64,000 bases of DNA from Macrostomum lignano (Eukaryota): NCBI GenBank assembly GCA_002269645.1, contig NIVC01000841.1:1-64000 (forward strand). Reading direction: 5' to 3'. The position numbers and the translations under genes were made by a program. Every line of letters begins with the position of its first letter. Positions within the stretch are counted from its first letter, which is position 1. Shown piece by piece: positions 13,056 to 37,695 of the stretch. The notes below the pieces were generated by a model, which was not told the DNA's origin, did no database searches, and worked only from the letters and a program-made list of their open reading frames with translations.

Positions 13056-16000
13056 TCAATAATAGGCCTTGTGCGCTTCGGCCAGAGATTTCAGTATGGC
13101 ACTGTGCGTTGACGACACGTCGGCTCGATTCCCGACGTCCATCCAGGTGACAAACTCGCCATCTCCAGCCAGTGCAGTCAGCATGGCCTGCGAGTCGAAT
13201 TTTCTGCTAAACGCTTCGTGCAAATTTACCAGCTCAGTCTCTAGCCAAGCTGATGGAGCCTGGCTGTCTGGCGATCCTGGAAGGACCGAATGCTTCAGAG
13301 CGGCTGCTTGGATCTCGCTGCGAGCGTTGGCCGAGTCCGCAACCGACTCAACCCGGTCACTTAGCCATGCTTTGAGCTCGTTGGCTAAATTGCAGCAGGT
13401 GGCCGAGCACCTGTGCGTAATAGGATGACATTTAGGTGATATCAGTTACTGACGTTCCCTGAGTCGCATCCGACAGTGCCACTCAAAATATCGACGTATG
13501 AGAATCATGCTCGTAGTGTTCTTCAGCTACGGTCCTCAACTCCCCTATCCTATAATAGTGTCCTTCAGCTACGGTCCTCAACTCCCCTATCCTATAATAG
13601 TGTTCTTCAGCTACGGTCCTCAACTCCCCTATCCTATAATAGTGTTCTTCAGCTACGGTCCTCAACTCGCCTATCCCATAATAGTGTTCTTCAGCTACGG
13701 TCCTCAACTCCCCTATCCTATAATAGTGTTCTTCAGCTACGGTCCTCAACTCCCCTATCCTATAATAGTGTTCTTCAGCTACGGTCCTCAACTCCCCTAT
13801 CCTATAATAGTGTTCTTCAGCTACGGTCCTCAACTCCCCTATCCTATAATAGTGTTCTTCAGCTACGGTCCTCAACTCCCCTATCCTATAATAGTGTTCT
13901 TCAGCTACGGTCCTCAACTCCCCTATCCTATAATAGTGTCCTTCAGCTACGGTCCTCAACTCCCCTATCCTATAATAGTGTCCTTCAGCTACGGTCCTCA
14001 ACTCCCCTATCCTATAATAGTGTCCTTCAGCTACGGTCCTCAACTCCCCTATCCTATAATAGTGTCCTTCAGCTACGGTCCTCAACTCCCCTATCCTATA
14101 ATAGTGTCCTTCAGCTACGGTCCTCAACTCCCCTATCCTATAATAGTGTTCTTCAGCTACGGTCCTCAACTCCCCTATCCTATAATAGTATCCTTCAGCT
14201 ACGGTCCTCAACTCCCCTATCCTATAATAGTGTTCTTCAGCTACGGTCCTCAACTCCCCTATCCTATAATAGTGTTCTTCAGCTACGGTCCTCAACTCCC
14301 CTATCCTATAATAGTGTTCTTCAGCTACGGTCCTCAACTCCCCTATCCTATAATAGTGTTCTTCAGCTACGGTCCTCAACTCCCCTATCCTATAATAGTG
14401 TTCTTCAGCTACGGTCCTCAACTCCCCTATCCTATAATAGTGTCCTTCAGCTACGGTCCTCAACTCCCCTATCCTATAATAGTGTCCTTCAGCTACGGTC
14501 CTCAACTCCCCTATCCTATAATAGTGTCCTTCAGCTACGGTCCTCAACTCCCCTATCCTATAATAGTGTTCTTCAGCTACGGTCCTCAACTCCCCTATCC
14601 TATAATAGTGTTATTCAGCTACGGTCCTCAACTCCCCTATCCTATAATAGTGTTCTTCAGCTACGGTCCTCAACTCCCCTATCCTATAATAGTGTCCTTC
14701 AGCTACGGTCCTCAACTCCCCTATCCTATAATAGTGTCCTTCAGCTACGGTCCTCAACTCCCCTATCCTATAATAGTGTCCTTCAGCTACGGTCCTCAAC
14801 TCCCCTATCCTATAATAGTGTCCTTCAGCTACGGTCCTCAACTCCCCTATCCTATAATAGTGTCCTTCAGCTACGGTCCTCAACTCCCCTATCCTATAAT
14901 AGTGTCCTTCAGCTACGGTCCTCAACTCCCCTATCCTATAATAGTGTCCTTCAGCTACGGTCCTCAACTCCCCTATCCTATAATAGTGTCCTTCAGCTAC
15001 GGTCCTCAACTCCCCTATCCTATAATAGTGTCCTTCAGCTACGGTCCTCAACTCCCCTATCCTATAATAGTGTTCTTCAGCTACGGTCCTCAACTCCCCT
15101 ATCCTATAGTGCGCACCTGTGACTGCGGTGCTTCACCAGAAAACTGGGAAACTCCTGGCGATTTGCCCGAACGATGGTGGCAGCCTGCAGAACTGGTCGA
15201 CCTCCGCGTTTAACCGCATTTTGCCTGTCGTCCCGCTTCCATCGGGTGACGGCCAGCACAGCGCAGTGGTTGGGGCCCCACAGCGGCAGGCCACCTCTGT
15301 CAGGCGCCGTTGTTGAAGTGCAGCTTTTGTACGGATTTCTCGGAGCCGAGTTCGCCACAGCGTACCTTGAGTAGAGAGTGTGAGGAAATTAACCGTTAAG
15401 AGAGCAATAAATCTGACTAATGATTCTATGGACTAATTGATTGTTTCACCTTCCGCCGTGAGACTTCCTGCTGAACCCGCCAGCCTGATCGAACCCATTG
15501 AAGCTGTCCTCAATGGCGTCTGTCGATTCCGGGTCCGCCCAGCCGCACAGACTCAATGCTGCAGATTTTCTTGACGACTGCAAATAATTTTTTTTCGGTT
15601 CATTTATTTGTAAATCCTCACACAAATACACGGCTAGATATCCTCTTAGATATTCCTCAGATACCCATTCTGATACCTAATTAAATACCCACCCAGTTAT
15701 CCACTTAGATACCCACTTAGATAGCCACCTAGATAACCACAAAGATACATACTCACAAAATACCCAAAAATTTATGCAACCGGGTAACTTACCAAGCTAC
15801 CCACACAAAGATACCCACAAAGATACCTACAATGATACCCACAAGATTTCCACAAATATACCCACAAAGATACCTAAAAGATACCCACAAAGATACCTAA
15901 AAGATACCCACAAAGATACCTAAAAGATACCCACAAAGATACCTAAAAGATACCCACAAAGATACCCTCATACCCACAAAGATACCCACACAGATACCCA

Positions 16001-37695: not shown

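What the first reader, a model, noticed from the sequence alone, without database searches (positions are those of the whole stretch)
13056..37695. TRPM-type channel with N-terminal ankyrin repeats: Ank-SLOG/MHR-6TM-TRP-coiled coil-NUDT9H
Seen: about 4 ankyrin repeats in frame with the melastatin homology region. One repeat spans a splice junction and ends in the same exon (31088-31339) that begins MHR1, so this is not a neighbouring-gene artefact. Known: canonical TRPM channels lack true N-terminal ankyrin repeats, which typify TRPA/C/N/V. As I recall, ankyrin-bearing members occur in some TRPS (soromelastatin, CED-11-like) lineages. A flatworm TRPM is the praziquantel target. Inference: either a TRPS member in a lineage where it is not well documented, or an independent ankyrin-TRPM fusion with a new gating input.
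Basis: partly seen in the sequence, partly recalled or inferred. Interest (0 to 1): 0.8.

Follow-up and report, generated by a model that had tools for sequence, protein, structure and literature searches.

The report
Flatworm TRPM2-like channel with ankyrin repeats
This is an intact Macrostomum lignano gene for a TRPM2-type ion channel that carries four ankyrin repeats at its N-terminus, an arrangement the TRP literature says TRPM channels lack, and related flatworm channels (a sister group to the praziquantel-target clade) have it too.

Summary
On the minus strand (37695..13056) I rebuilt a 21-exon, all GT-AG, 1786-aa ORF. Domain order is disordered tail, four ankyrin repeats (aa 91-224), linker, SLOG/MHR1-2, MHR3/4, 6TM, TRP helix, coiled coil, NUDT9H. 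Repeat 4 spans the exon 2/3 junction, and exon 3 (31339-31088) also encodes the conserved FGxxxF start of MHR1.

The organism is Macrostomum lignano. The gene is a 98.3%-identical duplicate of GenBank BOX15_Mlig003066g1, whose model comes from a transcript-based annotation.

Himmel et al. 2020 found no ankyrin repeats in TRPS. The gene sits in a flatworm-only clade with TRPM2-like channels, and its close relatives keep the TRPM-specific Cys-rich motif.

The fusion is not private to this genome. Pfam Ank_2 scores above threshold upstream of SLOG in a second M. lignano paralogue and in Schistosoma, Clonorchis and Opisthorchis orthologues. These form one clade (NJ bootstrap 93.5%), sister to the clade holding TRPM_PZQ. 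Both intron positions and phases in the Macrostomum ankyrin region are shared with Schistosoma.

What the ankyrin module does is untested. I found no paper describing this architecture. Verdict: real, conserved, a new variant of a known kind, moderately interesting.

The parts
37315..37695 (-). Exon 1: start codon, about 90-aa low-complexity N-terminal tail, and ankyrin repeat 1 (aa 91-123, about 37425-37327)
   Evidence: ATG at 37695 is the first ATG after an in-frame stop. Donor GTGAGG follows 37315. AF2 helices 91-104 and 108-117.
31985..32191 (-). Exon 2: ankyrin repeats 2 and 3 and the first residues of repeat 4 (aa 128-196)
   Evidence: Acceptor CAG and donor GTAAGA, phase 0. Pfam Ank_2 covers aa 133-219. 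Both flanking introns are at the same alignment column and phase in M. lignano P0161 and S. mekongi P0167.
31088..31339 (-). Exon 3: remainder of ankyrin repeat 4 (aa 197-224), disordered linker, and the FGEVEF start of MHR1 (aa 265-280)
   Evidence: splice sites; AF2; alignment to solved TRPM structures starts at this motif; LSDAT_euk starts at aa 279.
27290..30196 (-). Exons 4-7 (30196-30025, 29955-29792, 29273-29015, 27969-27290): SLOG / MHR1-2 and the start of MHR3
   Evidence: Pfam LSDAT_euk aa 279-540, 80 bits. Foldseek top hits are TRPM2/4/5/8 MHR1-2 at E~1e-11. Exon model.
20760..27102 (-). Exons 8-11 (27102-27049, 26957-26653, 26132-25904, 21004-20760): MHR3/4 (TRPM2-like domain) and a low-complexity pre-S1 linker
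   Evidence: Pfam PF25508 TRPM2-like domain, 152 bits, reaching aa 877. Exon model.
17188..20224 (-). Exons 12-16 (20224-20125, 19368-18925, 18470-18275, 18005-17876, 17393-17188): pre-S1, S1-S6 with pore loop (YFQIYGE), and TRP helix ([13 protein letters not shown])
   Evidence: Pfam Ion_trans aa 1019-1278. TM alignment with flatworm, Lingula and Lottia TRPMs.
16487..16833 (-). Exon 17: post-TRP helices and a coiled-coil-like segment
   Evidence: Sequence ...[48 protein letters not shown]. There is no Pfam TRPM_tetra hit, so the coiled coil is read from the sequence only. This exon is 99.7% identical in the mosaic paralogue locus L001.
13056..16375 (-). Exons 18-21 (16375-16118, 15577-15450, 15365-15117, 13410-13056 including the stop): linker and NUDT9H domain with a degenerate Nudix box
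   Evidence: Matches human NUDT9 (1q33) at E=2e-21 and nvTRPM2 NUDT9H at E=7e-13. The Nudix box REFGEE aligns to NLANEL.
32600..36900 (-). LTR retrotransposon inside intron 1, not part of the channel. ORF at 33126-36656. LTR cores at 32697-32831 and 36763-36897. Outer limits are approximate.
   Evidence: ORF has Pfam RVT_1, RT_RNaseH and Integrase_H2C2. LTR cores are 99% identical. The insertion is absent from the two other genomic copies of the gene's 5' end.

Best explanation
The region holds an intact, spliced, protein-coding gene of the free-living flatworm Macrostomum lignano. It encodes a TRPM2-like ('nudix' type) cation channel whose N-terminus carries a four-repeat ankyrin domain.

The gene belongs to a flatworm-specific TRPM clade, here called clade B. 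Full-length members of clade B carry an N-terminal ankyrin module upstream of the melastatin region. These members are two M. lignano paralogue groups plus orthologues in Schistosoma, Clonorchis and Opisthorchis. A cestode member has a degenerate version. Clade B is the sister of the flatworm clade that contains the praziquantel target TRPM_PZQ, and that clade lacks the module. The ankyrin module was most likely added once, in an early flatworm ancestor, in front of the Cys-rich/MHR1 region.

How it most likely works (inferred, not shown): it forms a tetrameric non-selective, probably Ca2+-permeable cation channel. Opening depends on intracellular Ca2+ at the conserved S2/S3/TRP site. The cytosolic MHR and NUDT9H layers act as the ligand-sensing apparatus. 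NUDT9H has lost the Nudix catalytic residues, so it would bind or scaffold rather than hydrolyse ADP-ribose. The ankyrin domain hangs off MHR1/2 on a flexible linker of about 40-55 residues. It most plausibly serves as a protein-interaction or regulatory handle for localisation, partner binding or modulation, rather than as part of the core gate.
For: Shown here:
- Gene model: 21 GT-AG exons, one ORF of 1786 aa, 98.3% identical to GenBank BOX15_Mlig003066g1.
- Transcript basis: GenBank M. lignano models derive from a genome-guided transcriptome assembly (StringTie/TACO/TransDecoder), not ab initio prediction (PMC5730564). The deposited CDS starts at the same ATG and includes the ankyrin exons.
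- Genomic copies: three copies carry the same ankyrin-MHR exon arrangement, namely the window, L002 and L001. Exons are 98-100% identical against 92-95% in introns. dN/dS is 0.25 for the ankyrin exons and 0.14 for the rest, on few substitutions.
- Ankyrin domain: Pfam Ank_2 scores above its cut-off, and AF2 shows four confident helix pairs.
- Other species: Pfam Ank_2 is above cut-off upstream of SLOG in M. lignano P0161 (36.5 bits), S. mekongi P0167 (35.3), C. sinensis P0018 (32.9) and O. viverrini P0168 (37.3). It is absent from TRPM_PZQ-clade and A1-clade proteins.
- Tree: NJ bootstrap is 100% for flatworm nudix TRPMs, 93.5% for clade B and 98.5% for clade A.
- Introns: both introns of the Macrostomum ankyrin region (after aa 127 and aa 196, phase 0) fall at the same alignment column and phase in P0161 and in S. 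mekongi. So do the next three introns.
- Conservation: the ankyrin region is as conserved between the window protein and trematode orthologues (23-25% identity) as SLOG is (24-25%).
- TRPM2-like nature: best PDB hits are nvTRPM2 and hsTRPM2, and NUDT9H matches 1q33 at E=2e-21.
- Ca2+ site: the motifs EELRQ (S2), WNIFD (S3) and REF (TRP helix) are present and align with Lingula TRPM2. Assigning these motifs to the TRPM2/4/5/8 Ca2+ site rests on my knowledge of those structures.
Against: - I saw no RNA reads. Transcript support is indirect, resting on the annotation method and on conservation.
- By phmmer, Macrostomum and trematode ankyrin modules are no more similar to each other than to generic ankyrin proteins. 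The shared introns lie at the canonical once-per-repeat position. A single origin is therefore inferred from position, clade and parsimony, not proven.
- The tree is neighbour-joining on a fast alignment, and no TRPS reference sequences were available. Grouping of the flatworm clade with TRPM2 rather than TRPM-alpha has only 58% bootstrap.
- The window gene has lost the Cys-rich motif.
- One of the two MHR1/2 arginines needed for ADPR activation of vertebrate TRPM2 is a glycine here. The Nudix box is degenerate. ADPR gating is therefore doubtful and the true agonist is unknown.
- This copy carries a same-strand LTR retrotransposon in intron 1 that could disturb its transcription.
Confidence: 0.75

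Rival explanations
1. The gene is a TRPS (soromelastatin, CED-11-like) channel in a phylum where TRPS has not been documented.
For: TRPS also has SLOG and NUDT9H domains, and its NUDT9H catalytic residues are lost in all species examined (PMC7306681; PMC13143021). The window gene's Nudix box is likewise lost. The window protein itself lacks the Cys-rich motif. Neither large TRPM/TRPS phylogeny sampled Platyhelminthes. My tree contained no TRPS reference.
Against: TRPS was explicitly found to be ankyrin-free. Best solved relatives are TRPM2 channels. The flatworm clade groups with Lingula TRPM2 (itself 1135 bits to nvTRPM2) and vertebrate TRPM2 rather than TRPM-alpha, though at 58% bootstrap. 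The nearest relatives P0161, P0167, P0018 and P0069 retain the CxC...H Cys-rich motif, described as gained in TRPM after the TRPS split.
Confidence: 0.05
2. The ankyrin-TRPM join is a gene-model artefact. Exons 1-2 would belong to a separate upstream ankyrin gene or be non-coding, and real transcripts would start downstream.
For: I inspected no RNA reads. Paralogue P0002 has a different first 26 residues, so 5' ends vary. M. lignano mRNAs are often trans-spliced out of polycistronic precursors.
Against: Exon 3 encodes both ankyrin repeat 4 and the MHR1 start in one frame. All junctions are canonical and phase-compatible. The deposited model is transcript-derived. The same architecture was annotated independently in four trematode and M. 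lignano genes. Intron positions are conserved. Exons are more conserved than introns between duplicates.
Confidence: 0.05
3. Macrostomum and neodermatan (trematode/cestode) clade-B channels gained their N-terminal ankyrin modules independently.
For: Cross-lineage ankyrin similarity (about 12 bits) is lower than similarity to unrelated ankyrin proteins (20-34 bits). The shared introns sit at the generic position just before GxTPLH, which one-exon-per-repeat ankyrin genes would also provide. The cestode member has no Pfam-detectable ankyrin.
Against: The module has the same location, directly upstream of the Cys-rich/MHR1 region. It has about four repeats in both lineages. It occurs only within one well-supported clade (93.5%) and not in sister clades or in the non-flatworm TRPMs among the best 150 library hits. 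Introns match in column and phase.
Confidence: 0.15
4. This particular copy is a decaying duplicate that is no longer functional.
For: It is one of at least two 92-97% identical loci in a neopolyploid genome (PMC5730564). It carries a copy-specific, same-strand LTR retrotransposon in intron 1. The gene lineage lost the Cys-rich motif and the Nudix catalytic residues.
Against: The ORF is uninterrupted over 21 exons, with all splice sites intact. Exons are 98-100% identical to the duplicate against 92-95% in introns. dN/dS is 0.14-0.25. The Cys-rich and Nudix changes are shared with the annotated, transcript-supported P0001.
Confidence: 0.1

Closest known systems
TRPM2 / invertebrate TRPM2-like channels (e.g. 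Nematostella nvTRPM2, PDB 6co7)
   Same: Shares SLOG/MHR1-2, MHR3/4, 6TM, TRP helix, a coiled-coil-like segment and C-terminal NUDT9H. nvTRPM2 is the best solved match at 403 bits. The Ca2+-site motifs are present.
   Different: It has an extra four-repeat ankyrin domain before MHR1. The Cys-rich motif is deleted. The Nudix box is degenerate, whereas (from my knowledge) nvTRPM2's is active. The arginine of the GSGRxAD motif is a glycine here. Overall identity is only about 25-30%.
Flatworm TRPM_PZQ (praziquantel target; Sm.TRPM_PZQ, Ml.TRPM_PZQ)
   Same: Belongs to the same flatworm 'nudix' TRPM radiation (100% bootstrap) and has the same core architecture including NUDT9H.
   Different: TRPM_PZQ falls in a different clade. 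S. rodhaini P0042 has the N/T/D pocket triad, with the same 289-residue N-to-D spacing as published for Sm.TRPM_PZQ. M. lignano P0015 and P0174 carry N/I/E, as published for Ml.TRPM_PZQ. The window protein has T/F/E at those positions. No Pfam ankyrin hit in any scanned clade-A protein whose model reaches SLOG (P0042 and P0174 not scanned).
Flatworm TRPM_MCLZ (meclonazepam target)
   Same: It is the only flatworm TRPM-like channel for which the literature discusses N-terminal ankyrin(-like) repeats (PMC10788528, PMC11731825, PMC12861061).
   Different: TRPM_MCLZ is described as lacking the MHR1/2 SLOG domain, and the review places it outside the NUDT9H-bearing 'nudix' subclade, calling it 'TRPM-like'. 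The window protein has a full SLOG plus NUDT9H, with the ankyrin domain added in front.
TRPS / CED-11
   Same: Has SLOG plus a NUDT9H with lost catalytic residues, and lacks a Cys-rich domain.
   Different: TRPS is reported to be ankyrin-free. The window gene's relatives have the Cys-rich motif and group with TRPM2.
TRPA/TRPC/TRPN/TRPV channels
   Same: Have N-terminal ankyrin repeats ahead of a 6TM TRP channel.
   Different: In those families the ankyrin domain sits next to the pre-S1 region and forms the main cytosolic skirt. Here it is a short module on a flexible linker, added to a complete melastatin-type cytosolic assembly.

Membership tests
TRPM (melastatin) channels | N-terminal SLOG / MHR1-2 domain | tested here: met
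   Pfam LSDAT_euk aa 279-540, 80.2 bits against a cut-off of 25.7. Foldseek top hits are TRPM MHR1-2.
TRPM (melastatin) channels | MHR3/4 region | tested here: met
   Pfam PF25508 TRPM2-like domain, 152 bits.
TRPM (melastatin) channels | 6TM pore domain followed by a TRP helix with a WxxQRY box | tested here: met
   Ion_trans aa 1019-1278. HWSLQRY aligns with the TRP box of other TRPMs.
TRPM (melastatin) channels | Cys-rich region (CxCG...H) before MHR1, reported as gained in TRPM after the TRPS split (PMC13143021) | tested here: not met
   An about 29-aa deletion inside exon 3 removes it from the window protein and from P0001/P0002. It is present in the nearest relatives P0161, P0167, P0018, P0168 and P0069, so this is a secondary loss.
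TRPM (melastatin) channels | No ankyrin repeats N-terminal to the melastatin region (textbook statement; PMC7306681) | tested here: not met
   Ank_2 above cut-off at aa 133-219, and four AF2 helix pairs. This is the respect in which the gene is a variant.
TRPM2-like / 'nudix' TRPM channels | C-terminal NUDT9 homology domain | tested here: met
   Human NUDT9 (1q33) at E=2e-21. nvTRPM2 NUDT9H at E=7e-13.
TRPM2-like / 'nudix' TRPM channels | Intact Nudix box (REFxEE), as in catalytically active invertebrate TRPM2 | tested here: not met
   REFGEE of NUDT9 aligns to NLANEL.
TRPM2-like / 'nudix' TRPM channels | MHR1/2 ADPR-site arginines (hsTRPM2 R302 and R358; residue roles from my knowledge of the structures) | tested here: inconclusive
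   The first Arg is conserved (FRSRFE). The second is Gly (GTGGLAD), whereas Lingula, Sinanodonta and Anneissia TRPM2 have GSGR.
TRPM2-like / 'nudix' TRPM channels | Phylogenetic grouping with TRPM2 (beta) rather than TRPM-alpha | tested here: inconclusive
   NJ bipartition (flatworm + invertebrate TRPM2 + vertebrate TRPM2) has 58% bootstrap. Group identities were checked against the PDB.
TRPM2-like / 'nudix' TRPM channels | Activation by ADP-ribose plus Ca2+ | not testable with these tools
   Needs electrophysiology. Only the Ca2+-site motifs could be checked, and they are present.
TRPS (soromelastatin) | Position as sister to all TRPM in a phylogeny | not tested
Indirect evidence points against it.
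TRPS (soromelastatin) | Absence of the TRPM Cys-rich domain in the lineage | tested here: not met
   Clade-B relatives have CxC...H. The absence in the window gene is a recent deletion.
TRPM_PZQ orthologues | Membership of the TRPM_PZQ clade | tested here: not met
   The window protein is in clade B (93.5%). TRPM_PZQ-type sequences are in clade A (98.5%).
TRPM_PZQ orthologues | Binding-pocket triad N (S1) / T or I (S4-S5) / D or E (TRP helix) | tested here: not met
   The window protein has T / F / E. P0042 has N/T/D, and P0015 and P0174 have N/I/E.
TRPM_MCLZ-like channels | Ankyrin-like N-terminus without an MHR1/2 SLOG domain (PMC11731825) | tested here: not met
   A full SLOG domain is present, and NUDT9H as well.
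Ankyrin-repeat domain | Profile match above the curated threshold and a helix-turn-helix repeat fold | tested here: met
   Ank_2 at 33.0-35.9 bits against a cut-off of 27.3. Four helix pairs with pLDDT 70-88.

The most novel reading that the evidence does not exclude
The N-terminal ankyrin domain is a true regulatory or gating input, for example partner-dependent or stimulus-dependent control of MHR1/2. It would have been acquired once in an early flatworm and kept for hundreds of millions of years. It would define a third, pharmacologically unexplored 'nudix' TRPM clade alongside TRPM_PZQ, and would be a clear exception to the rule that TRPM and TRPS channels have no N-terminal ankyrin repeats.
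Probability: 0.3. Interest if true: 0.7.

Novelty: new variant of a known kind. Interest (0 to 1): 0.5.

Why it matters
Reviews and the two large TRPM/TRPS phylogenies treat the melastatin lineage as free of N-terminal ankyrin repeats. Neither phylogeny sampled flatworms.

This gene shows that flatworms hold a conserved TRPM2-like clade in which an ankyrin module was added in front of a complete melastatin region. That gives a natural case for asking what an ankyrin domain adds to an already large cytosolic sensing assembly.

The clade is sister to the one containing the praziquantel target and is present in human and livestock flukes. Its members are therefore plausible, so far orphan, candidates for anthelmintic target work. 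M. lignano offers transgenesis and RNAi to study the channel in vivo.

The practical limit is that the proteins already sit in public databases with automatic ankyrin annotation. The gain here is recognition and phylogenetic framing, not discovery of a new kind of molecule.

Tried and rejected
- Word-indexed homologue searches: all three returned almost nothing useful, because candidate lists were swamped by ankyrin and low-complexity words. One search gave only P0001-P0004. One search gave only generic ankyrin proteins and missed P0001 itself. One search gave only three M. lignano proteins. The exhaustive HMMER search was what found the relatives.
- Designed-consensus ankyrin phmmer scan of the 150 hits: too insensitive, as it missed the window protein. 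I replaced it with Pfam scans.
- N-terminal extensions of 150 aa or more in 20 other TRPM hits: these are low-complexity, with no ankyrin. Only the cestode P0069 shows an ankyrin-like motif, and Pfam does not detect it.
- MAFFT --auto on 87 full-length sequences timed out. I used FFT-NS-2 instead.
- Supplementary table of Rohr et al. giving the Ml.TRPM_PZQ accession is not held. I identified the clade from the published pocket residues instead.
- Foldseek on the N-terminal model: returned only TRPM MHR1-2 hits and added nothing on the ankyrin part.
- Clonorchis locus for an intron comparison: the gene range was too long, so no DNA was returned. I used S. mekongi and M. lignano P0161 instead.
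- Ideas rejected: TRPS membership, TRPM_PZQ orthology, TRPM_MCLZ-type architecture, and a neighbouring-gene artefact. Reasons are given under the rival explanations and the membership tests.
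Full report
**What is there**

The window is eukaryotic DNA with many introns full of minisatellites. A rough concatenation of minus-strand ORF pieces hit two GenBank proteins of the free-living flatworm Macrostomum lignano. These were BOX15_Mlig003066g1 (P0001, 1781 aa) and BOX15_Mlig009389g3 (P0002, 1457 aa).

Using P0001 as a guide and checking every junction, I obtained a 21-exon model on the minus strand from 37695 to 13056. All introns are GT-AG, the CDS is 5361 nt, and the protein is 1786 aa and 98.3% identical to P0001.

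**The ankyrin observation**

- Exon 1 (37695-37315) encodes a low-complexity tail and repeat 1.
- Exon 2 (32191-31985) encodes repeats 2-3 and the beginning of repeat 4.
- Exon 3 (31339-31088) encodes the rest of repeat 4, a linker, and [17 protein letters not shown].

All three junctions are phase 0.

Pfam Ank_2 matches aa 133-219 above its gathering score: 33.0 bits in the full protein and 35.9 bits in the N-terminal fragment, against a cut-off of 27.3. The Ank model also passes its cut-off on the fragment (23.3 bits against 21.1). Ank_5 and Ank_3 are significant by E-value but score below their cut-offs.

An AlphaFold2 model built on a six-sequence alignment gives four helix-turn-helix pairs between aa 91 and 224 at pLDDT 70-88. 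An unstructured stretch follows at aa 225-281, then the SLOG fold.

The FGEVEF segment in exon 3 is where alignments to solved TRPM2, TRPM4, TRPM5 and TRPM8 structures begin. Pfam LSDAT_euk also starts there, at aa 279.

**The rest of the protein**

- LSDAT_euk covers aa 279-540, the TRPM2-like MHR3/4 domain reaches aa 877, and Ion_trans covers aa 1019-1278.
- The TRP box reads HWSLQRY, and a heptad-rich segment lies in exon 17.
- The C-terminal domain aligns over its whole length with human NUDT9 (1q33, E=2e-21).
- In that alignment the Nudix box REFGEE corresponds to NLANEL, so hydrolytic activity is unlikely.
- The S2 EELRQ, S3 WNIFD and TRP-helix REF motifs align with those of Lingula TRPM2. 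From my knowledge of TRPM2/4/5/8 structures, these form the Ca2+ site.
- Of the two MHR1/2 arginines that I recall as required for ADPR activation of vertebrate TRPM2, the first is kept (FRSRFE). The second is glycine (GTGGLAD), as in the other flatworm 'nudix' TRPMs where I could locate the motif (lysine in S. mekongi). Lingula, Sinanodonta and Anneissia TRPM2 have GSGR.

**Is the join real?**

I could not look at RNA reads. Four lines of indirect evidence support the join.

1. The GenBank M. lignano annotation was built from a genome-guided transcriptome assembly and TransDecoder, not from ab initio prediction (PMC5730564). Its model P0001 starts at the same ATG and contains the ankyrin exons.
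2. Three genomic copies show the same exon arrangement. They are the window, the P0001 locus L002 (colinear, 92-97% nucleotide identity) and the P0002 locus L001.
3. Between the window and L002, exons are 98-100% identical while introns are 92-95% identical. dN/dS is 0.25 for exons 1-3 and 0.14 for the rest, though on few substitutions.
4. The architecture recurs in other species, as described next.

**Relatives**

The three word-indexed searches were uninformative. An exhaustive HMMER search of aa 1-1164 of P0001 found 4368 proteins at E<=0.001.

Names for the best hits and Pfam scans show Ank_2 above threshold, upstream of SLOG, in:

- M. lignano BOX15_Mlig025325g2 (P0161, 36.5 bits);
- Schistosoma mekongi KAK4474030 (P0167, 35.3 bits);
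- Clonorchis sinensis KAG5447154 (P0018, 32.9 bits);
- Opisthorchis viverrini T265_14336 (P0168, 37.3 bits).

A cestode protein (Anoplocephala perfoliata, P0069) has an N-terminal extension with one ankyrin-like motif, but no Pfam hit.

There is no ankyrin in M. lignano Mlig001812 (P0015) or P0017. There is also none in the long trematode proteins P0019 and P0020, or in the low-complexity N-terminal extensions of 20 other TRPM hits. P0174 (Mlig004938) was not scanned against Pfam.

**Tree**

I built a neighbour-joining tree on 976 well-occupied columns. It has the following features.

- The flatworm NUDT9H-bearing TRPMs form one group (100% bootstrap).
- That group splits into clade B (93.5%), which holds every ankyrin-bearing protein, and clade A (98.5%).
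- Clade A contains the TRPM_PZQ type. S. rodhaini P0042 has the published trematode pocket triad N/T/D, with the same 289-residue N-to-D spacing as Sm.TRPM_PZQ. M. lignano P0015 and P0174 have N/I/E, the configuration published for Ml.TRPM_PZQ (PMC9910428).
- The window protein has T/F/E at those positions. It is therefore a paralogue of the praziquantel target, not its orthologue.
- This matches the statement that schistosomes have three 'nudix' TRPMs (PMC11731825).
- Outside flatworms, the nearest groups are invertebrate TRPM2-like proteins (Lingula P0024 scores 1135 bits to nvTRPM2) and vertebrate TRPM2 (P0047).
- TRPM-alpha (P0094) lies further away. The bipartition uniting flatworm and TRPM2 sequences has only 58% bootstrap.

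**One gain or two?**

In favour of a single gain:

- The ankyrin module sits in the same place, directly before the Cys-rich CxC...H motif and MHR1.
- It has about four repeats in both lineages, and it is confined to one clade.
- I mapped exons of P0161 (L004) and S. mekongi P0167 (L003) exactly. Both introns of the Macrostomum ankyrin region fall at the same alignment column and phase in all three genes. The next three introns also match, at columns 396 (phase 0), 453 (phase 1) and 509 (phase 0). Column 509 could only be compared between the window gene and S. mekongi, because P0161 was mapped only to aa 430.
- The ankyrin region is as conserved between the window protein and trematode proteins (23-25% identity) as SLOG is (24-25%).

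Against a single gain:

- By phmmer, the Macrostomum and trematode modules are no closer to each other than to unrelated ankyrin proteins.
- The shared introns lie at the generic once-per-repeat position.

I rate a single early gain as most likely, and independent gains at about 0.15.

**Literature**

- Himmel et al. [quoted passage not shown] - The 2026 metazoan TRPM study also has no flatworms. It mentions only the divergent ankyrin-like repeats inside MHR3/4, and describes the Cys-rich domain as a TRPM-specific gain (PMC13143021).
- The Marchant group discusses N-terminal ankyrin(-like) repeats only for TRPM_MCLZ, which lacks SLOG (PMC10788528, PMC11731825, PMC12861061).
- The legend of their Figure 1B lists an 'ankyrin repeat domain' among the annotations drawn for schistosome TRPM paralogues. 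The ankyrin-SLOG arrangement may therefore be visible in that figure, but it is not discussed in the text.
- Earlier schistosome TRP reviews do not mention it.

The architecture is present in public databases but, as far as I could search, undescribed.

**Mechanism**

*Shown:* the domain composition, an intact ORF, conservation across flatworms, and a non-catalytic Nudix box.

*Inferred:* the protein forms a tetrameric, Ca2+-co-activated, non-selective cation channel of TRPM2 type. The pore motif YGE suggests divalent permeability, judging from other TRPMs as I recall them. The agonist is unknown, and classical ADPR gating is doubtful given the R-to-G change and the degenerate Nudix box. The ankyrin domain is only four repeats long and sits on a flexible linker. 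It is therefore most simply read as a partner-binding or regulatory module, not as a spring or a core gate element. This last step is the weakest.

**Verdict**

It is a new variant of a known kind, of moderate interest.

Noticed in passing
window 32600-36900 (ORF 33126-36656, minus strand; LTR cores 32697-32831 and 36763-36897): An LTR retrotransposon lies in intron 1 in the same orientation as the channel gene. It has RT, RNase H and the integrase zinc domain but no integrase core hit. Its LTR cores are 99% identical, and it is inserted into a 12-nt minisatellite. It is absent from the duplicate locus L002 (intron 1 = 564 nt) and from paralogue locus L001, so it is a recent, copy-specific insertion.
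   Followed up: partly
L001 (NIVC01000841.1, BOX15_Mlig009389g3) against window 29048-32571, 37186-37527 and 16409-17098: The paralogue is a mosaic. The 3' part of exon 1, exons 2-6, several intervening introns and exon 17 are 92-100% identical to the window at nucleotide level. The remaining exons are only about 40-70% identical at protein level. This looks like gene conversion or recombination between TRPM paralogues that carried the ankyrin/MHR1 block into a second gene, or possibly an assembly chimera.
   Followed up: partly
window 10142-42483 against L002 (NIVC01000307.1): The whole locus is a colinear duplicate of the deposited Mlig003066g1 locus, at 88-98% identity over the aligned blocks (about 92-97% within the gene). 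This fits the known large-scale duplication in the M. lignano DV1 genome.
   Followed up: partly
window 31136-31255 (exon 3, aa 225-264): The window gene, P0001 and P0002 lack about 29 residues that carry the TRPM Cys-rich CxC...H motif. The motif is present in M. lignano P0161 and in the trematode and cestode orthologues. A phase-2 intron found at this place in P0161 and S. mekongi is also missing.
   Followed up: partly
window 13514-15108, 15804-16091, 16838-17143, 26179-26485, 28004-28766, 29301-29787, 30477-31068, 31357-31952: Many introns of the gene contain a long minisatellite. Examples are 42 nt x 38 copies at 98% identity, 8 nt x 96 copies, and 16 nt x 19 copies at 100% identity. Several create long spurious ORFs on both strands.
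   Followed up: no
window 13056-13410 and 15117-15365 (NUDT9H exons); MHR1/2 motif at aa 519-527: The Nudix box is degenerate (NLANEL in place of REFGEE). The GSGRxAD arginine of TRPM2 is glycine in flatworm 'nudix' TRPMs of both clades where the motif was found (lysine in S. mekongi). This hints that ADP-ribose handling changed in the whole flatworm radiation, including the TRPM_PZQ clade.
   Followed up: partly
L003 (S. mekongi CM068306.1) exons at locus 21636-21734 and 23819-23917: In the schistosome orthologue two successive ankyrin repeats are each encoded by an exact 99-nt (33-codon) phase-0 exon. The gene spans 92 kb, against 19-25 kb in M. lignano.
   Followed up: no
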